The notes under the pieces were generated by a model, which saw only the letters and a list, made by a program, of their open reading frames with translations, was not told where the DNA came from and searched no databases. A DNA stretch of 64,000 nucleotides from Lytechinus pictus (Eukaryota): the NCBI RefSeq assembly GCF_037042905.1, contig NC_087259.1, positions 2,542,001 through 2,606,000 on the forward strand, read 5' to 3'. This document shows, piece after piece, positions 34,512-52,630 of this stretch. A program made the position numbers and the translations under genes. Position 1 is the first letter of the stretch. Every line of letters begins with the position of its first letter.

Positions 34512-34686
34512 AATCGATTTCTCTATGTGCGGGATGCGACCATCCCATTCTGGATAGGTTTATACTGAAAGTGGTTGATCGAGCCTGGCATGCAAAGTGT
34601 TTGCGGTGTGTTGACTGCAACGCTCAGCTCACTGACCGGTGCTTTTCCAGGGACGGTGGGGTCTTCTGCAAGGAAGATTTTTTCAA
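34512..34686 (+). CDS. Lhx3/4: Lhx3/4 exon encoding LIM domain 1
   Basis: Acceptor ttttttgtAG at 34510-34511. Encodes [58 protein letters not shown], matching the Lhx3/4 LIM1 signature [16 protein letters not shown]...CKxDFFK. Donor AA|GTAAGT (phase 2). Confidence 0.97.
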
Positions 34687-36762
34687 GTAAGTCTGTCGAT
34701 GATGATAATGGAATATAGGGCATTTCTTTCGCTTTGATGATGACCATCATTACTGATGACGGTGATTGCNNNNNNNNNNNNNNNNNNNNNNNNNNNNNNN
34801 NNNNNNNNNNNNNNNNNNNNNNNNNNNNNNNNNNNNNNNNNNNNNNNNNNNNNNNNNNNNNNNNNNNNNNNNNNNNNNNNNNNNNNNNNNNNNNNNNNNN
34901 NNNNNNNNNNNNNNNNNNNNNNNNNNNNNNNNNNNNNNNNNNNNNNNNNNNNNNNNNNNNNNNNNNNNNNNNNNNNNATGATGGTGGTAAAAATGATTAT
35001 TGTGGTGGTGGCAATGTTTATATATAGTCGTGTTGTTGGTGGTGGTTGGTGGGGGTGATGATGATTTTGATGATGATAGTGATGGTGATGCTGATGATGA
35101 TATATTTTGTGATGGTGGTGGTGGTATGGTAATGATGATGATAATATATATTTTTGGTGATGGTGGTAAAGTAATGATGATGATGATGATGATGATAATA
35201 TTTTGGTGATGGTGGTGGTATATTAATGATGATGATACCGAAAGAATATTTATTGAACATATTAATTCATCTGATCATGTTTTACTGTAAAAATTGGATG
35301 GCATAGAAGACAAATAAAGAGATCCGAGGGAGACCGACACAGATAGATATGGGGGGGGGGGGAGAGGGGGGTCGGAGGTCCAAACTAATCAGGCTTATTT
35401 TAGCCTTGGGGATGACTGTTCGCGTCATGTGAATTAGGACGACGCCCTAAAGAGTCACTTTAAAGCAGCTTTTCTCTTCATGAAATACCATGATCATGCC
35501 ACACCCCCTTAGGGTAGGGTTGACACCGCCGCGGACACCCTCCCAACATCCGCTCTGATGAGGTAGGCCAATGGCCGGGGGTGAAGAAATGCTCGGGTAT
35601 TGGCCGCTGATTCTTGTACCCCACCGACTCCCATTTCTTACTCTGATTGCACTAGCAGCAGTTGTGAAAGGGTTAAGCGTGATTTGACAGACCAGACGGA
35701 GCAAGGTTCACTCACCGAGTGGTGTTACAGCGCATCTTCCCCTTTCGACATCGCTTCCAGATATATAAGCCCTTTCGAACCCCAAGCACCCAACACAAGT
35801 AGACACATGCAAGGTGTTTCGGCGCGCGAAATGAAATTTACATCATGTAGCCCGCAGTGGAATGCAAAAGGGTGCGAAATTGAGCTTATCCTTTCACTAT
35901 CTATCGCCCTACGGATAGCGCTTAACTGTGCCCCGGTCGTGCCGAGTCGCGGCGCCAAAACAGATTGCGTTGGCGCCATTTCTGATATTCGCGTGTACAT
36001 TGGCATTTGGAGGTTGTTTACCTTTTGAAGGTGCTATGAATTCTTACTAAAGAAAGTAGCAAGATATGAATTATCTGTTTGCAATATTGATTGTACTAGT
36101 AATGCACTTTTAACAAATAAACTTTCGTTTTCTCTTTTGACCCTTTCTCTCATTCCATATCTGCTTTCATCCCTTTCTCTTTGTACTTAATCCTACTCAT
36201 CTCAACCCTTTCTCCTCCTCATCTTCCTCCACTACTTATTTCCAAAAAATCGCAATGCTCCTTATCTTAATCTACCTAACCCCCCTTGTCTTTCCCACCT
36301 CACCTTCCAAACTTCTTAAACCACTCCTCCAACTTTATCTCTCTCATTCTCATATTCCATCTCATAACATTTCTTCTCTTACTTTCAAATTTTCATTATA
36401 TTTCATCGATGTTGTCTACTCCCTTTTGTTCGCCACCTTAATTGCCCCCTCCTTAATGTATCTTCTTCTCCCTTCACCTTATTTTTTCTTTAATATTTTT
36501 CACGTCACCTCGCGTCCCCTTAATTTGACTTTATTTATTATTTTCCTCTTATACTTCCTTCCCTATAATTACATTCTCCATTATCTTCCTTTTTTCACTC
36601 TCCTCCTCATCTTCTTATCTTTCTCATCTTCGGGAAACATCTTCAACCTTTCCCTCTCTTGTCTAACCCTCTGCATTACCTTTGCCCATGTCCTCCTTCT
36701 CCTCTTCATTTTCCTCTGCCATCATACCCCCTCCCGACATCATCACCACTTACGTCATATAG

Positions 36763-36965
36763 GCGATTCGGCACCAAGTGCTCCTCGTGTGAGAAGGGCA
36801 TCGCCCCGACTGAGATCGTCCGAAGAGCTCTCGACAACGTCTACCACCTCCATTGCTTCTGTTGTATCATCTGCACACGACAACTTTCTACCGGAGACGA
36901 ATTCTTCCTCATGACTGATAACAAACTAGTTTGCAAACAAGACTACGAGGCGGCTAAAGCAAGAG
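36763..36965 (+). CDS. Lhx3/4: Lhx3/4 exon encoding LIM domain 2
   Basis: Acceptor catatAG at 36761-36762. Encodes [67 protein letters not shown]. Donor G|GTAAAG (phase 1). Phases fit both neighbours. Confidence 0.97.
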
Positions 36966-38015
36966 GTAAAGAACATGAAATGAAATTAATCCAATCATGC
37001 CGATAGCAGTTTGAAATATATTTCTGTTTTCTTTGCTCTTATTGGCAACAATGATGCACACGTCACACCAACGTAGCCGACTCCAGGCCGACCAAATCTA
37101 TTACGTTATTTTCAATGACGTAATTGTTCTATCGATCGGTTTAAAAAGAGTCAGATTCATTGGTATGACTGTTTATATTGGATTTTATTGCAATAAAAAC
37201 TATCAAAATACAATCACAAGCAGTCAAAGACTGAAATGAGTGAAAGTTTACATGTACAAATAGAAATATAACAAAATATAAAGTAAACATTATAAATAAA
37301 TATTAAATACAATACACATTCATACAGATGAAAACGAAATGTATCATAAGTAAATATTTAACAAGAGCATTAGCTTTCTATCCTCTAGAAAATGAACTAT
37401 TTCTGTTTATCAAATTTTTTTTAATTTGAACTAAACGGCTGCCAGTGTTGCCTCACTTGCCTGTTTCTCCGAAAACATTAATATTATTGGTTGTACGATA
37501 ATTAGCTAGTCCTTACTCATAAATAGATATAGGAACATTAAGTAACAAACAAGGGCCCTTTATTTTTCATTTCAAATGAGTTTTTCACAATCATCTGTTT
37601 GTCCGAGTGTGCCTGTCAAATGAAACAAAATTGGTTTCTGTTCAAATCATTTCAAGAATAATGCGATCCCCATTGATAAGAAATCAAAGATTTGTAAATA
37701 CAAGTCCTATACATGTCATTTGCTATCGAAAGTACCAATTAGAATTATCATGTGTGGCGTGTGGTTTTGATGTGAATGTTAATGTAACATGAGACAAACT
37801 ACTGAAGAGAAGTCTGATGATGACGAAATGATAGCAGTAATGTCCACTTTTTTCAACATGAAAAGCTGCTTGATTTTAAAAGAGAACATAATTATCATAG
37901 TTTGCCTTTATCATGCATATTAAAAAAAAAATGGCAGAAAAGGATATGTTATGGTGATTTATATTTTTAGTTGATTATTTTGCATGGACTATGAAAAAGA
38001 AAGCTTTCTAGTCGT

Positions 38016-44575: not shown

Positions 44576-44944
<369 letters not shown>

Positions 44945-45393: not shown

Positions 45394-46167
45394 CCCTTGA
45401 AACCAGCTGAATCCATATAAAAGAGAAAAATCAAAGAAACATATTGTTGAAAGTTTGAGGAAGATTGAATGAATAATAAGAAAGTTATGAGCATTTGAAT
45501 ATTGAGATCACTAATGCCATGTAGATCCTCCCATTGGCAATGCGACCAAGATCTGTGATGTCACACACGTACAACTCCCTCATTACTTTAGTACTTATTT
45601 CACTTATATTCTCACTTTTATAGAGTCTATCACAAGGTGAGGTGTCCTCTTTATGAGAGGACAATTACAGAGGTTTCACAACATTATATCATTGATGAAT
45701 CGTTTGTCATATGATTAGAATTAGCAAAAAGAAATGTTTTGGGGTATATTTTCAGTGTCCAAAACTGGACAACTCTCTCCTTTTGGACACTGAAAATGTA
45801 CCCCAAAACATCTCTTTTTGCTCATTCTAATCATATGACAAACGATTCATAATTGATATAATGTTGTGAAACCTCTGTAATTGTCCTCTCATAAAGAGAA
45901 CACCTCACCTTGTGATAGACTCTATAAAAGTGAGAATATAAGTGAAATAAGTACTAAAGTAATGAGGGAGTTGTACGTGTGTGACATCACAGATCTTGGT
46001 TGCATTGCCAATGGGAGGATCTACATGGCATTAGTGATCTCAATTTTCAAATGCTCATAACTTTCTTATTATTCATTCAATCTTCCTCAAACTTTCAACA
46101 ATATGTTTCTTTGATTTTTCTCTTTGATATGGATTCAGCTGGTTTCAAGGGTTTCATTCTCCTTTAA
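45394..46167. mobile_element. Fold-back Kolobok/T2-like MITE in the homeobox intron of Lhx3/4
   Basis: Near-perfect inverted arms of about 370 bp (45394-45764 against 45781-46151) with a 16-bp spacer. The right end is TTTCATTCTCCT-TTAA; the left terminal 16 bp are missing. Confidence 0.9.
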
Positions 46168-46197: not shown

Positions 46198-46540
46198 GAA
46201 GACTTACAAGCCAAAGACAGCACGCATGACATTTTGCAATCAATTTTCATTGGATGGTTGGGGAAACGTCTATATATTGTATGGTTTCAAAAAGGGTTTC
46301 TTTCAACGCAATAAGGGGAACGTCTCATTGTCAATTAAATATCAAAGTTTGCAGTATTATTTTATTTTTATTCATACCCGACCAAAATACCCGTCTTTTA
46401 TCCCACATTCGCACGAACCATGCAAACCAAATAATCTCTAAACCGATCGATAGATTGTTATTTGTAATAACATGATTGCTCGGTCTGGAGTCGGTATTGC
46501 TGGTATAACAATGACCAAACATAACGGAGCAAGACCTAAA
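46198..46540. repeat. Interspersed repeat of about 350 bp, copy 2
   Basis: Same orientation and sequence family as 23669-24040. Confidence 0.85.
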
Positions 46541-46686
46541 GGAATACTCTTTAAAAAAAGAAGAAAAAAAAAAGATAAACAAATAAAATATCAATCCAGT
46601 CAACGATACATTAAAAAGCATTCATGCCATCAATGTTGCTATCATCTTACTGACCAATCATCATCGCTCTTTTTGCAATCACACAG

Positions 46687-46897
46687 GTCTGGTTCCAAAA
46701 CCGTCGGGCGAAGGAGAAACGGCTCAAGAAAGACGCCAACCGCCAGCGATGGGGTCACTACTTCCGGAACATCAAAAGGGTCAACGAGGCGAGTAGTCCG
46801 GCCAGTGGTCCTGAACCTCTTGCGTCACCGGTCAAGCTGGAACCATCCGATCTGGACGATACAACCGTCTTTGACGGTGAGCTGGCTTTTGAAGATG
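46687..46897 (+). CDS. Lhx3/4: Lhx3/4 exon encoding the homeodomain recognition helix and Lim3-specific motif (not in the ORF track in this frame)
   Basis: Acceptor cacacAG at 46685-46686. Encodes VWFQNRRAKEKRLKKDANRQRWGHYFRNIKRVNEASSPASGPEPLASPVKLEPSDLDDTTVFDGELAFED. Donor G|GTGAGG after 46897, with an alternative same-phase donor after 46876. Confidence 0.94.
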
Positions 46898-47428
46898 GTG
46901 AGGGAGGTAGACGGGTTGAGAGGAGGAGCCCCGAATATTCAAACTTTCATTTCACCCCACCCCCATAGAAAAAAATATAAAATAGAAAGAAGTTATAATG
47001 TTCAGCTCGTGCATTTCAGTCATGTATTTTTCGTTAATATTTACAGCATTTATCAATTTACAGAACATTTTGTACATTATGTCACTTTTTGTATAGAAGC
47101 CATCGTTTTTAATTCGAATATCTTTTTGATACCACAGTTTTTTTTTTGCAAAACAGATGAATTAAAGTCTCAGTAGTATTATGATTGCTTTTGTCATGTT
47201 TGTCTTATTTGTGTTAAATTTGATTATTAAGTGTATCAGAACACAACGGCAGCGATAAAATATTACTTCAGACACGTCGAACTATTGTTTTTAATGGAAA
47301 TTGGAAAGTTGATGATTTCAAGATGTGTTTCGTTTCCTTAGAATACATCACTGTGAATAAATTGAAGCAAAAATTATAGTTAACAATGACAATAATGACG
47401 TTCTATGTCTCTGTTTTAATTGTAACAG

Positions 47429-47916
47429 AACACTCACCAAGCATGCCTGATCATGGAACCCCGTTTCCGAACGAAAGACATCAGCATGGACCGCCCGGCG
47501 TACCCGTCTCTAGCCCGTACATGAATCACTGCGAATCGTTTCTCTCTCCCCCACCAACCGCCCCTTCAGTGTCCGGTGGTTACCCTGTTAACAACCCCTC
47601 TCCAACCCTACCCGTTCAACTTTCCCCGAATCACCTCACCAACGGCATTGGTATGCCGGGAATTCCCTTCTCCGAAGCCGCCGGCATCCCGGGGATCATG
47701 AGCGCCGCCAGCCATGGCTTGGGAGAGGCTATGCGTGCCGTCGTCAACCCAGGAGGTGATATGGGCGTGGTGACCCCTCCACCACCACCAGGAAGTTTTC
47801 ACGAGGAGTTCCCCCACCCCCACCCCCACCCCGGTCCTTGGTTAGAGCATCATCCCCACCCTCATCCACAGTCTCATCCTCACCCCCACCCTCATCCGCT
47901 CCCACATCAGTATTAA
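47429..47916 (+). CDS. Lhx3/4: Lhx3/4 terminal coding exon, Pro/His-rich C-terminus
   Basis: Acceptor gtaacAG at 47427-47428, phase 1 (G+AA=E). Encodes EHSPSMPDHG...PWLEHHPHPHPQSHPHPHPHPLPHQY, stop TAA at 47914-47916. GC-rich coding composition. Confidence 0.88.
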
Positions 47917-50830
47917 AAGAACGGTATCCACACTCTGTGAACGACTGGACGCGCTTCAAGACGAGCGTGAATGAACTCTAAGCAAGTGGATGCTGAAGGA
48001 ATGAATATGCATGATATGCAAAATGACCACACTCTTATTATGGATGATTGAGCTCTGATGGACTTTACATAATAGCTGCATGGACTTTGCAAGAATGGCG
48101 GCGGAAACAATTTGTTGATTATGTCTAGTAGGCTCTTATGATCGATGGTGACGACTGTCGGTTAATATTGTTATCAAACATTGTATCATATAGCGTGCAA
48201 TTTGTCAATGAATTAATCACATAAAATATATAATTTTAAGTAAATGATTTTCTTGTGATGTGATGTTTTGCAATGCCATCAACTTCAGTTTGCCATGTGT
48301 TTGTTATGTATGGATTATGTTTTGACTAATCTATTTCACTATATTTGCAATTGAGTTGGACAAAATGTGGTCATCTCCTCCTTGAGTCTAACAAAATGTA
48401 ATCCCAGTTAATATTGACCATTATTACTTGCCGTGCTATGCAATTCATTCAGAATGTATAAATCAACTCATTTCTATTGTAAAGTCGTTTTTCAAAACTG
48501 TGCAATTTTTCTTTTTCCAAGAAGCATTATACAATCACGGGGCTATGCAATATGTGCTATACAAATTTCGACAAATACGGGCATTGTTCTCATTATGCCA
48601 GGTTCTGATTTTTTTTTAAATAAAGATATTATATAGCAGTTTCTTTTAATTCATAATATAACTTGGCGTTGTTAATTGTAACCTGATATTTCAAATTATT
48701 CTTCAGTATATTAAGAATGTACCACAGAACATCTGTTATCAAGGTCAATTCACGAGCCACAGTCATGTATCTTTATGCTTAACTATGCAGACTTCTAGTT
48801 TTGTTGGGGGATATGAGTAACGCCCCGAATTTTAAACAAAATAAAGTAAACATATTAAATTATAACTATCTTTTCACATACCGTACAAAGTCAACATATG
48901 CCATATTAGTTTTGAAGAGCATTACCTCGGGACCTAAACTACTCTGGCACATTACCCAGGATGCAATATTTTGGTCATCTAGTCTTATGATTCACACCCA
49001 TTAGAATAATTCAGAATAATTAAGAACCGTCTGTTACGCTTTACAACATTCATAAAACAATATAATCCGAGAAGAAGCAACAAGATTCAGAATGCCTCCC
49101 AAAATTAATATTTTCGAACAATTGAAAATGATCATCATCACATTTTCGCTAAAAACTGAAAATATATTTCCCATTGTTTTATGATAAGGTGTGTATCAAG
49201 GCTATCATAAAGCACATGAGTCTATGTCAGGAGGTTTCACTTTGTGTTGATATTCATGGAAGACAGTTCCAATTCAAAACAAATCAACAAAACTCACTAC
49301 CAAAACAAGTGACCATTTAGGAAATCGAAAACGGCGAGAATTCACCCAGTTTTCATTCCATATCAGTTGAAAGAGTACATTACATTTCAATATCGCATTT
49401 TTTTAGCATGATGGTAAGACATCATAGCAATTAGTGCAATCACAATGTTTAATTCGGTTCAAATTATTTGGTTTACAATATATTGAAAATTCAGGACTTG
49501 TGCAGTAGTCACTAATGACAGTACTTAATGAAAGTAGATCGTTCCATATTTTTAAACCTGTATTTCGTTTAATTGCAATAGCAGCAAATCCATTCCACAC
49601 AATTTGATTTTCGATAGAAGTCGTTGTCCACATGTACTTTATTCGTCAAACATGTCCATTGTTTGCTTGAGGAACGTCAGGATCTTGAAACATTCCACGG
49701 GGCATTTCATGAACAATTATGTCAGTGATTTTCACTGACAATTGTTATAAGCTACTGAAAATCTTTGCCTCTGATTGGCTGATGTGAAAAAAGTCAGTGA
49801 AAAATCAATGACAACATTTTTCATGAAACGCTTCCCAGAGAAACACGTGCAATACTTCGCAATTGGATACTCCTCAGAAGTGTCATGATTTGAACATTAT
49901 TTGTACATCTTTATCGTTGTTTTGTACGGTCTAGAAATTATCAGCAAAAAATCTAGATCTGCAATCGTGTTCGGCAAGCACAATAACATTCAAGTTTAAT
50001 GATTTGTAACGAAATGATTTCGAATAGGTCTATATTGTTTATTGCAGGAATTTATGTTGGCAAGATGACTTAACAATTTTACAGAAATGCCGAATTTTGA
50101 TTGGCCTATCAACCCATAAAGAATATATATATTTCTTTCTTATTCAGGCAATGTTGGAACTTTATTCTATCTTGATTTTATGGCAGATGATTTTCAAAAC
50201 CTTCTTAAATATTAATCGCCTCGAAGACGTATATTAATTCGGTTTCGGTGTCTTTTTAGGGTAATTTCTAACCGAGGGCTTCAAGTGCCAAGGGATAATT
50301 TACTATATACACTGACATAGCGAACGTACCATGGATCATTTCATAACTCATTGATTTTTTTTCTTGGACTTCCTCAGTTATAGTCGCCATAAAATACAAA
50401 GTTGGTTGAATCTGTAAGATTAAAAATCTACCAAAATTCATTACGGCCATTAGTTTTTCCTTTTCTTTTGAGATGGAATCTGCTCGTTTGTGGTGAGATT
50501 TTGAGTTAATTTATTCATGTGCAGGGTTTTTTCTTAGGAGAGAGTTTAAATTTTACTCTTCAACGGTTGATTTCCCCGATCTATACGACAAAGTGACTTC
50601 GATTTTTTTAAATGAATTTTCATTCATTAGACATTTCGCGTTGAATGTATTCGTCTTTACATTTTCAACAACTTTATTTATTTATTTGTGTGTTATACGA
50701 GCACTCTCTTGCCCACGTGTGCAGTTTCGTTACTACTTTGTTCGTTCACGTTTCGCAATATGTATCGACGGAAGTATATACCTGATTGTGTATTATTTAT
50801 TGATCAATTCAAATAAAAATGTAAACAGAG
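47917..50830 (+). other. Putative long 3'UTR of Lhx3/4
   Basis: AT-rich sequence after the stop codon. AATAAA occurs near 48619, 48840 and 50812; the last is followed by a GT-rich stretch. The true 3' end cannot be fixed from sequence alone. Confidence 0.5.
49699..49836. mobile_element. Short PIF/Harbinger-like MITE in the putative Lhx3/4 3'UTR
   Basis: GGGGCATTTCATGAA ... TTCATGAAACGCTTCCC with an internal CTGATTGG. Similar ends occur at 19310-19465, 50875-51045 and 62197-62317. Confidence 0.65.
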
Positions 50831-50874
50831 AAATGCTCAGTGTGACTTTGTGGTCGGTTGTTTTCCCTAGTCCT

Positions 50875-51045
50875 GGAGGACCGTTTCATAAAAATGATGG
50901 AAGTTGTCAGCACGAGTTGCAATCAATCGCAACTTTAAAAAAATCATGCGCAACTTGATATTCAACCAATCAACAGCGCGCATTTGGGACTTGCGATTGA
51001 TGTTGGGGCTTGCGTTTAAACGCAACTCTTTCTGCAACGGGCCCC
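50875..51045. mobile_element. Short PIF/Harbinger-like MITE, possibly composite
   Basis: GGAGGACCGTTTCATAAA ... TCTGCAACGGGCCCC ends with an internal CCAATCA. Confidence 0.5.
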
Positions 51046-52630
51046 TGGAAAGATGTCTTATTCCGACAGTTACTATGGTAAGAGTCAGAGGCCAGTGCTT
51101 CTTCTTAGCCAAACAAAAACCAAGCATGTGTCGACACTGACAATAATTAGTCAGTGCTGACAACTTTCCGAACACCCCAGAACTTGGGGGGGGGGGGGAG
51201 GACCTCATTGTCATGTCTTTCTCAATGAAAAAGTAGGGGTATTTGACAACACAACTGCCCTCTCTTTTTATATTGCTCCTTTTTTTCTTTTTCTCGTTTG
51301 CCCCTTTCTCAACTTTTCATTTTTTTATGTGGCACTGGCAGTTGCTTNNNNNNNNNNNNNNNNNNNNNNNNNNNNNNNNNNNNNNNNNNNNNNNNNNNNN
51401 NNNNNNNNNNNNNNNNNNNNNNNNNNNNNNNNNNNNNNNNNNNNNNNNNNNNNNNNNNNNNNNNNNNNNNNNNNNNNNNNNNNNNNNNNNNNNNNNNNNN
51501 NNNNNNNNNNNNNNNNNNNNNNNNNNNNNNNNNNNNNNNNNNNNNNNNNNNNNNNNNNNNNNNNNNNNNNNNNNNNNNNNNNNNNNNNNNNNNNNNNNNN
51601 NNNNNTTAGTGATGGTGATAATTCAAATGAGCGGATACTATTCATGGAGGTATATACCATAATTTTCATTAGCATTTACTGATCAGTATATATGTATTGA
51701 AACCAGTAGTTATATTTTTTTCGGAGCAACCCAAAGGAGTGTAAACGATAGAGGTCGCTATTCCTATCTAAGAGCTGTGTTGCATTGCTCTGATAAAGGT
51801 AGGGTACAGGAAAGACATTTCAATAACTTGCATTAGATTTATCTATTAAAACCTTAAAATCATTATTTTGGGTCTATCAGCCACAAAATATTCAACAAAG
51901 AAAATATACGGATATTCTGTCAAGGTCAAGCGCTTCGTTTTGGAGCTGAATGCAATAATCGATCGCCTATGTTAGATCTACAATACTGTTCAATAATCGA
52001 GCCCTTTTCCCGGACCTCAAGGCTCGCCAGATAATGTATAATAAAATATAGAAATAATATCATTTTCTTCGAAAATTAAAGGAGGGACCTGATTTTGTGT
52101 AAATACCATACAACAATCAAACCAATAAAAGAATACCCAAAGACTCCTTCATCTCTACATATTTTATTGTTGCCTAATATCCAGATCATGATTTTAATTT
52201 CCAACTCGGTTGGTTATATATCTCAATGCATTTTCAGTACATGATTACAAAGATAGTTATTCAGAATACCTATATTTTCAAGAACAATCATTTAAATCGG
52301 TCCTGCATTGAAATTCGGGTATTGAATACGGAAAAAACGAAACTTTGTTCAATTAGCTTATAAGTACTATGATTTAGAAATAACTCTCCTCTGTAATAAA
52401 TTACAACGTAGAGGAAATTTTTCCTCATACATCTTTTTCGTTATACGTCCAATAATGAAACTTTTCTATCAAACGGAATCAAAATCTTATTCATCTTGTG
52501 TGATAAGCTGAAAGAGATAATTCATTGATAATGAAATCTATTTTTATGCTATTAGACATTCTCTTGATAAAAACATGTACGGTTGCTCTAAAAATAAATA
52601 TCATAGACAAATGATCAATGCATTTTATGG

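What the first reader, a model, noticed from the sequence alone, without database searches (positions are those of the whole stretch)
48195..49965. Cluster of 11 miR-92-family seed matches in the Lhx3/4 3'UTR
Seen in sequence: TGCAAT occurs 11 times on the sense strand. There is one 8-mer GTGCAATA (49847), three GTGCAAT (48195, 48500, 49434), three TGCAATA (48546, 48962, 49574) and four 6-mers (about 48269, 48346, 48439, 49960). My rough hand estimate at about 35% GC is around one chance hit in 2.9 kb. Known: GTGCAATA is the complement of the miR-92/25 family 5' end (UAUUGCAC), a bilaterian family. Inference: this mRNA may be a strong, multi-site miR-92 target.
Basis: partly seen in the sequence, partly recalled or inferred. 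Interest (0 to 1): 0.7.

Follow-up and report, generated by a model that had tools for sequence, protein, structure and literature searches.

The report
miR-92 site cluster in Lhx3/4 tail
The transcribed tail of a sea urchin Lhx3/4 developmental regulator gene carries eleven docking sites for the conserved microRNA miR-92, about nine times more than chance, so this gene is probably held down strongly by that microRNA, although repression itself has not been tested.

Summary
The genome rate predicts about 1.2 in this 2.9 kb 3'UTR (Poisson about 6e-8). It is the most enriched of all 4096 hexamers there. The antisense strand has 2, and 12 kb of the gene's introns have 4. No tandem or dispersed repeat underlies the sites.

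The gene is an Lhx3/4-class LIM-homeobox gene. A spliced transcript contig joins its last two exons, and coverage stays even to about 50.73-50.85 kb, so all sites lie in the mRNA.

The genome encodes four clustered miR-92 hairpins whose mature arms start UAUUGCAC. Three of the four mature arms match published sea urchin miR-92a and miR-92c. Among 36 echinoderm microRNA seeds, miR-92 is the lone strong outlier.

In two other species, the unalignable sequence downstream of the same last exon carries two GTGCAAT each (expected about 0.15-0.18). Three of these four are full 8-mers.

Verdict: a credible multi-site miR-92 target. It is a new member of a known kind. Repression, co-expression and conservation within urchins are untested. 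Earlier notes of this scan report other multi-site microRNA 3'UTRs elsewhere in this genome.

The parts
46687..46897 (+). Penultimate coding exon (end of the homeodomain, WFQNRRAKEK, plus linker)
   Evidence: Pfam Homeodomain positions 46-57. Spliced to 47429 in an X1 contig with GT..AG ends.
47429..47916 (+). Last coding exon with stop codon TAA at 47914-47916. It holds the conserved C-terminal block ...PSPTLPV...IPFSEAAG..GLGEAMRAVV and a His/Pro-rich tail.
   Evidence: ORF; splice junction; alignment with last-exon relatives from other species.
47917..50830 (+). 3'UTR of about 2.9 kb. The 3' end is approximate, just after AATAAA at 50812.
   Evidence: X1 depth is about 41-79 from the exons to 50689 (apart from the repeat bin 49700-49864) and 29 in bin 50690-50854. 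The intron and 46400-46564 are at about 0. AATAAA is at 50812.
48195..48201 (+). miR-92 7mer-m8 site GTGCAAT
48269..48274 (+). miR-92 6mer site
   Evidence: Its 12-nt context ATGTTTTGCAAT is identical to the site 142 nt past the stop in L008/L009.
48346..48351 (+). miR-92 6mer site
48439..48444 (+). miR-92 6mer site, overlapped by CTATGCA (miR-153 7mer-m8 match) at 48436
48500..48506 (+). miR-92 7mer-m8 site GTGCAAT
48546..48552 (+). miR-92 7mer-A1 site TGCAATA. An upstream CGGGGC can pair with the microRNA's CCCGGC, giving the best predicted duplex (-18.5 kcal/mol). It is overlapped by CTATGCA at 48543.
48619..48624 (+). Candidate proximal poly(A) signal AATAAA after a T-run. A short isoform ending here would still keep the six proximal sites.
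   Evidence: The spliced X1 contig ends at 48613. Use of this signal is not shown.
48962..48968 (+). miR-92 7mer-A1 site TGCAATA
49434..49440 (+). miR-92 7mer-m8 site GTGCAAT
49574..49580 (+). miR-92 7mer-A1 site TGCAATA, inside the palindrome ATTGCAAT, which also gives one of the two antisense hits
49847..49854 (+). miR-92 8mer site GTGCAATA
49960..49965 (+). miR-92 6mer site
50812..50817 (+). Distal poly(A) signal AATAAA at the point where transcript coverage ends

Best explanation
The 2.9 kb 3'UTR of this sea urchin Lhx3/4 mRNA is a multi-site target of the miR-92 family. Argonaute loaded with miR-92 (5' end UAUUGCAC) would pair its seed with up to eleven TGCAAT-core sites: one 8mer, three 7mer-m8, three 7mer-A1 and four 6mers. 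Six of them lie within 355 nt of the proximal UTR. The summed and partly cooperative effect would be lower mRNA stability and translation wherever miR-92 is abundant, so that Lhx3/4 protein appears only where or when miR-92 is low or transcription is strong.

Shown here: the sites, their enrichment and strand bias, their place inside the transcribed UTR, and the presence of cognate microRNA genes. Inferred: binding, repression and the biological role.
For: - Count and enrichment: 11 sites against about 1.2 expected, the top hexamer of 4096, and none of 3000 first-order simulations reached 11.
- Strand and location: 11 sense against 2 antisense; 4 sense in 12 kb of introns; none in the coding exons.
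- Independence: no repeat underlies the sites.
- Transcription: a spliced contig and even depth through about 50.7-50.85 kb place every site in the mRNA.
- Cognate microRNA: four hairpins (-35.6 to -44.7 kcal/mol) lie within 5.5 kb on contig C3, with the mature sequence on the 3' arm. Three of the four mature arms (two hairpins share one) match spu-miR-92a and spu-miR-92c as printed in PMC4669494. The best Rfam matches are all miR-92-family models.
- Expression of the microRNA: miR-92 has been measured by qPCR in sea urchin embryos (PMC11076791).
- Specificity: among 36 echinoderm seeds miR-92 has P 6e-8, and the next, miR-153, has 0.006.
- Other species: downstream of the homologous last exon, L007 has two GTGCAATA and L011/L012 have GTGCAAT plus GTGCAATA, with about 0.15-0.18 GTGCAAT expected in each. 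L008/L009 have one site in 224-352 nt. None has an antisense match. GTGCAAT is the best 7-mer across the three species that is not low-complexity.
Against: - No experiment or CLIP data exist. Co-expression of miR-92 and Lhx3/4 is unknown.
- Four sites are weak 6mers. G before the core (4 of 11) is not significantly enriched (P 0.12).
- Run X1 is kept as unstranded contigs broken into pieces, so one continuous sense transcript across the whole UTR is inferred from even depth, not shown.
- Three raw RNA runs did not cover the gene at all.
- In the other species the hexamer count itself (2 against about 0.9 expected) is not enriched, their UTR limits are unknown, and the UTRs cannot be aligned. 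This is recurrence, not positional conservation.
- Dense clusters of some hexamer are not rare in this genome if any hexamer is allowed.
- The hairpins score below Rfam's gathering thresholds.
Confidence: 0.65

Rival explanations
1. The UGCAAU repeats are recognised by another trans-acting factor: a sequence-specific RNA-binding protein, or a different small RNA that shares the hexamer. The match to the miR-92 seed would then be coincidental.
For: The shared core is exactly six bases. The bases on either side show no significant preference. Two sites sit in a longer shared motif, CTATGCAAT.
Against: No RNA-binding protein with this motif was identified here. In the other species the recurring word is the longer GTGCAAT(A), which is what seed positions 2-8 plus A1 predict. 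miR-92 genes with that seed are present in four copies.
Confidence: 0.15
2. The cluster is a chance or compositional cluster with no function, picked out because many windows and many words were examined.
For: Allowing any hexamer, clusters of 11 or more in 1771 nt were seen at one locus in about 260 kb of genome even after a flank filter. A third-order model trained on the UTR itself reaches 11 or more in 7 of 3000 runs, but that model contains the signal.
Against: For this particular word the largest count elsewhere is 4 in about 517 kb of strand sequence. Poisson P is about 6e-8, or about 2e-6 after correcting for 36 seeds. The cluster is strand-specific and confined to the transcribed UTR. 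The 7/8-mers recur independently in two other species, with a joint P of about 1e-4.
Confidence: 0.12
3. The sites are a DNA-level regulatory element, a 3' enhancer with repeated binding sites for a transcription factor such as a bZIP half-site GCAAT or a POU-like ATGCAAT.
For: GCAAT-containing words resemble known transcription factor half-sites (general knowledge, not tested here). Developmental genes often have nearby enhancers.
Against: Binding to double-stranded DNA should not favour one strand, yet the count is 11 to 2. The cluster begins and ends within the transcribed UTR. There is no extended motif beyond the hexamer.
Confidence: 0.04

Closest known systems
Classical multi-site microRNA targets: lin-14 with lin-4, lin-41 and hbl-1 with let-7 in C. 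elegans, HMGA2 with let-7 in mammals (from general knowledge)
   Same: A developmental regulator gene has a long 3'UTR holding many (about 6-8 or more) seed matches to one conserved microRNA family. This gives strong, switch-like repression.
   Different: Those interactions were demonstrated genetically and biochemically, whereas this one is a prediction. The pairing here (miR-92 with Lhx3/4) was not found in the literature searched. More than a third of the sites are 6mers.
Known miR-92 roles in neural progenitors: Drosophila miR-92a/b repressing jigr1, mouse miR-92 repressing Tbr2/Eomes (from general knowledge, not read here)
   Same: The same microRNA family and seed. The proposed logic is also the same: a progenitor-expressed microRNA restrains a differentiation regulator.
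   Different: The target gene and phylum differ, and those targets carry few sites. Nothing here shows where miR-92 or Lhx3/4 are expressed in the urchin.
Other multi-site 3'UTRs noted by this scan in the same genome: s1-313785 (let-7, miR-125 and miR-100 sites behind a Hunchback/Ikaros-type gene) and s1-327717 (six miR-124 seed matches)
   Same: The same genome and the same architecture: clustered seed matches for a conserved microRNA in the UTR of a regulatory gene.
   Different: The microRNAs and genes differ. I did not check those notes.

Membership tests
Canonical animal microRNA target (seed-match rules) | Perfect complement to microRNA nucleotides 2-7, strengthened by a match at position 8 and/or an A opposite position 1 | tested here: met
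   11 cores: 1 8mer, 3 7mer-m8, 3 7mer-A1 and 4 6mers.
Canonical animal microRNA target (seed-match rules) | The sites lie in the 3'UTR of an expressed mRNA, on the sense strand | tested here: met
   Spliced contig and even depth to about 50.7-50.85 kb in X1. The stop codon is at 47914-47916. The strand is inferred from the splice and the gene orientation.
Canonical animal microRNA target (seed-match rules) | The cognate microRNA is encoded in the same genome | tested here: met
   Four hairpins at G000:C3:41216017-41221464 have UAUUGCAC on the 3' arm.
Canonical animal microRNA target (seed-match rules) | Sites are preferentially conserved in orthologous UTRs | tested here: inconclusive
   GTGCAAT occurs twice in each of two other species against about 0.15-0.18 expected. 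The UTRs cannot be aligned, their ends are unknown, and no congeneric urchin could be compared.
Canonical animal microRNA target (seed-match rules) | The microRNA and the mRNA are present in the same cells, and repression depends on the seed | not testable with these tools
   This needs small-RNA and in situ data, reporters or CLIP.
miR-92/25 microRNA family (the hairpins on contig C3) | A stable hairpin with the mature sequence UAUUGCAC... on the 3' arm | tested here: met
   Folds of -35.6 to -44.7 kcal/mol with the mature sequence on the 3' arm. Three of the four mature arms match spu-miR-92a and spu-miR-92c in the table of PMC4669494.
miR-92/25 microRNA family (the hairpins on contig C3) | Reaches the Rfam gathering score of a miR-92-family model | tested here: not met
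   No hit at gathering thresholds. Below threshold, the best hits are mir-310 (40.2 bits against 48, E 4e-7), mir-92_2, ciona-mir-92, mir-92 and mir-312. These models are built mostly from other phyla.
Lhx3/4 class of LIM-homeodomain proteins | Two N-terminal LIM domains followed by a homeodomain | tested here: met
   Pfam LIM (7e-17 and 8e-19) and Homeodomain (1e-12), in separate exons in the expected order.
Lhx3/4 class of LIM-homeodomain proteins | Closer to Lhx3/Lhx4 than to other LIM-homeodomain classes | tested here: met
   Among solved structures both LIM exons match Lhx4 and Lhx3 best (E 1e-24 to 5e-34), against Isl1 at about 1e-17. No phylogeny was made, and not every LIM-homeodomain class is in the structure bank.

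The most novel reading that the evidence does not exclude
Echinoderm Lhx3/4 genes may ancestrally carry one or two strong miR-92 sites. This urchin lineage would then have expanded them to eleven. That would turn Lhx3/4 into a switch-like, heterochronic-style target, whose protein can appear only once miR-92 falls in differentiating cells. It would be a counterpart of the lin-4/lin-14 and let-7 switches, built on a different microRNA. The overlapping miR-153 matches (CTATGCAAT) would add a second, mutually exclusive input.
Probability: 0.25. Interest if true: 0.6.

Novelty: new member of a known kind. Interest (0 to 1): 0.45.

Why it matters
Lhx3/4 is a conserved regulator of cell identity; the vertebrate Lhx3 and Lhx4 genes act in motor neurons and the pituitary. 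Its post-transcriptional control outside vertebrates is essentially undescribed. If confirmed, eleven sites for one deeply conserved microRNA would be among the densest single-family site clusters on a developmental regulator. It would give the sea urchin gene-network field a clean, testable link between a microRNA and a transcription factor, and a first strong target for echinoderm miR-92. It would also offer a case for studying how the number of sites grows within a lineage. If the reporter test fails, it is a useful warning about seed-match clusters.

Tried and rejected
- Rfam at gathering thresholds found nothing at the miR-92 loci. Only the permissive search gave family hits.
- Two further pattern matches (L005, L006, one mismatch each) do not fold as hairpins and were dropped.
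- Three raw RNA-seq runs (X14-X16) gave no coverage of the gene, only of repeats at 49725-49760 and 50914-51050. They say nothing about transcript ends or strand.
- Protein searches with the last exon found only six relatives. The representative search gave one true hit and one spurious repeat protein, P0003.
- The long contigs carrying P0004 and P0007 could not be fetched. L013-L015 have only 122 nt after the stop.
- The metagenome scan only found L009 again.
- An alignment of the UTR starts of four species showed no alignable blocks. The best BLAST hit between UTRs was 29 nt around the first site, at E 0.078.
- The 20 variants that X1 shows in the UTR all miss the sites. Only about 0.5 hits were expected, so this carries no information.
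- Runs of a second organism (X5-X9) hold 6-9% of the UTR's words.

Full report
**Observation.** A search for TGCAAT gives 63 matches on both strands of the 64 kb window, which is what shuffles predict (60.8 +/- 7.6). Eleven of the 33 plus-strand matches, however, fall between 48196 and 49965.
- In the 2914 nt from the stop codon to the distal poly(A) signal, the expected count is 1.2 from the rest of the window. A 200 kb sample of 18 other contigs gives the same (0.41 per kb per strand). A first-order model of the UTR itself gives 1.9.
- Poisson P is about 6e-8 to 8e-8. None of 3000 first-order simulations reached 11 (maximum 8).
- TGCAAT is the most enriched of all 4096 hexamers in the UTR, and the runner-up, at P 1.7e-4, overlaps it.
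- Outside the UTR no 1771-nt stretch of either strand holds more than 3 in the window, or more than 4 in the genome sample.
- The antisense strand of the UTR has 2, one of them from the palindrome ATTGCAAT at 49572. The gene's introns have 4 sense and 6 antisense in 11,953 nt, and the coding exons have none.

**Not a repeat artefact.** Tandem Repeats Finder and the repeat finder show no repeat family containing the sites, and all eleven have dissimilar flanks. This matters because raw clusters of some hexamer are common in this genome owing to minisatellites. Even after a flank filter, 3 of 1537 hexamers of similar frequency reached 11 or more, all at one locus, in about 517 kb of strand sequence. 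The cluster is therefore remarkable only because the word was specified in advance as a seed match, not as 'any word'.

**The gene.** On the plus strand lie exons that Pfam calls LIM (34523-34687, 7e-17), LIM (36764-36967, 8e-19) and Homeodomain (44690-44827, 1e-12; its end is at 46687-46722). Both LIM exons match Lhx4 and Lhx3 best among solved structures (E 1e-24 to 5e-34), against Isl1 at about 1e-17. The reading frame ends with TAA at 47914-47916. 'Lhx3/4' is therefore justified, although no tree was built.

**Transcript.**
- Run X1, kept as Logan contigs, contains a 2156-nt contig that skips 46898-47428 with GT..AG ends and continues to 48613. X1 is therefore RNA, and the proximal UTR is joined to the coding sequence.
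- Word depth is about 41-79 in every bin from the exons to 50689, apart from one repeat-inflated bin at 49700-49864 (433). It is 29 in bin 50690-50854. It is about 0 in the intron, upstream of the exon and beyond 51185.
- An AATAAA lies at 50812.
- I infer one 3'UTR of about 2.9 kb that contains all eleven sites. This is an inference because the distal pieces are separate, unstranded contigs.
- An AATAAA at 48619, after a T-run where the spliced contig stops, could give a short isoform. That isoform would still keep the six proximal sites (48196-48551).
- Three raw RNA runs (X14-X16) did not cover the gene.

**The microRNA.**
- A pattern for the conserved body of miR-92 finds four perfect matches within 5.5 kb on the minus strand of contig C3, at 41216017-41221464.
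- Each sits on the 3' arm of a hairpin of -35.6 to -44.7 kcal/mol and begins UAUUGCAC. Two single-mismatch matches elsewhere do not fold.
- Three of the four mature arms (two hairpins share one sequence) match spu-miR-92a and spu-miR-92c as printed in a table of PMC4669494.
- Rfam gives nothing at gathering thresholds. Its best sub-threshold hits are all miR-92-family models: mir-310 at E 4e-7, then mir-92_2, ciona-mir-92, mir-92 and mir-312.
- miR-92 has been measured in sea urchin embryos (PMC11076791).

**Specificity.** I took the first eight bases of the 36 echinoderm microRNAs in that table and counted their seed matches in the UTR.
- miR-92 stands alone with 11 against 1.2 expected (P 6e-8).
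- miR-153 follows with 5 against 1.1 (P 0.006), and miR-1 with 3 against 0.55 (P 0.018).
- After correcting for 36 seeds, the miR-92 result remains at about 2e-6.

**Other species.** The last coding exon has relatives (39-49% identity, with a conserved GLGEAMRA block) on short contigs from other samples.
- L007 has 2.1 kb after the stop and two GTGCAATA 8mers.
- L011 and L012, which are the same or a very close species, have 2.0 kb with one GTGCAAT and one GTGCAATA.
- L008 and L009 have 224-352 nt with one TGCAAT 142 nt past the stop, in a 12-nt context identical to the window's site at 48269.
- None has an antisense match.
- GTGCAAT is expected about 0.15-0.18 times per 2 kb, so two in each of two species has a joint probability of about 1e-4.
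- Across the three species GTGCAAT is the best 7-mer apart from simple repeats.
- The UTRs cannot be aligned, so this is recurrence or turnover of sites, not positional conservation. The UTR limits in those species are unknown, and their plain hexamer count (2 against about 0.9) is not enriched.
- The evidence suggests an old miR-92 input of one or two strong sites, expanded to eleven in this lineage.

**Site quality.**
- Local A+U content around the sites is 57-78%.
- Five of the ten gaps between neighbouring sites are 45-93 nt.
- The site at 48546 has an upstream CGGGGC that can pair with the microRNA's CCCGGC. This gives the best predicted duplex, -18.5 kcal/mol, against a UTR background of -6.7 +/- 3.4.
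- G before the core (4 of 11) is not significantly above expectation (P 0.12).

**Mechanism and rivals.**
- The best reading, at about 0.65, is summed and partly cooperative repression of Lhx3/4 mRNA by miR-92-loaded Argonaute. This would restrict the protein to cells or stages with little miR-92.
- Another factor that recognises UGCAAU (about 0.15) cannot be excluded by sequence alone.
- Chance (about 0.12) is disfavoured by the strand bias, the restriction to the UTR and the recurrence in other species.
- A DNA-level element (about 0.04) is disfavoured by the 11:2 strand asymmetry.

**Novelty.** Multi-site microRNA targets among developmental regulators are a well-known kind (lin-14, hbl-1, HMGA2). 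A full-text search for miR-92 together with Lhx3 returned 18 papers, none with either term in its title or abstract, and none was opened. This is a new member of a known kind. It is of moderate interest and directly testable in a model embryo.

Noticed in passing
outside the window: G000:C3:41216017-41221464 (minus strand); loci L001-L004: A cluster of four miR-92 hairpins lies within 5.5 kb. Two have the spu-miR-92c mature sequence, one has spu-miR-92a, and one is a variant ending ...GGCCAGU. All score below Rfam gathering thresholds.
   Followed up: partly
window 48436-48444 and 48543-48551 (also 48783): The composite word CTATGCAAT occurs twice. Here a miR-153 7mer-m8 match (CTATGCA) overlaps a miR-92 site, so the two microRNAs could not bind at once. 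A third CTATGCA stands alone. miR-153 matches number 5 against 1.1 expected (P 0.006).
   Followed up: partly
window 49354, 49591, 49691: There are three CATTCCA matches to the miR-1 seed, one of them the 8mer ACATTCCA at 49690. L007 and L011 each also have one miR-1 7mer-m8 match downstream of the stop.
   Followed up: no
window 49702-49831: A short inverted repeat (31-nt arms, 84% complementary, 68 nt apart) sits inside the 3'UTR. Reads from many other genomic copies pile up at 49725-49760 with opposite-strand joints. It looks like a miniature inverted-repeat transposon fragment, and the 8mer site lies 16 nt beyond its right arm.
   Followed up: partly
window 50914-51050: A highly repeated element with very high RNA and contig depth (thousands) and many opposite-strand joints lies just downstream of the UTR end. 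It is probably a common foldback or MITE-type repeat.
   Followed up: no
window 45485-45664 (-) and 45881-46060 (+): Two nearly identical 180-nt stretches lie in opposite orientation in the intron before the penultimate exon. They were seen as twin 59-aa ORFs differing at 2 residues. This is a foldback repeat of unknown kind.
   Followed up: no
window 47800-47913: The protein ends in a long His/Pro repeat (HPHPHP...). L007's ends in a His-rich tail, and four of the other relatives' end in SWIEQPQY. The tail is lineage-specific, low-complexity coding sequence.
   Followed up: no
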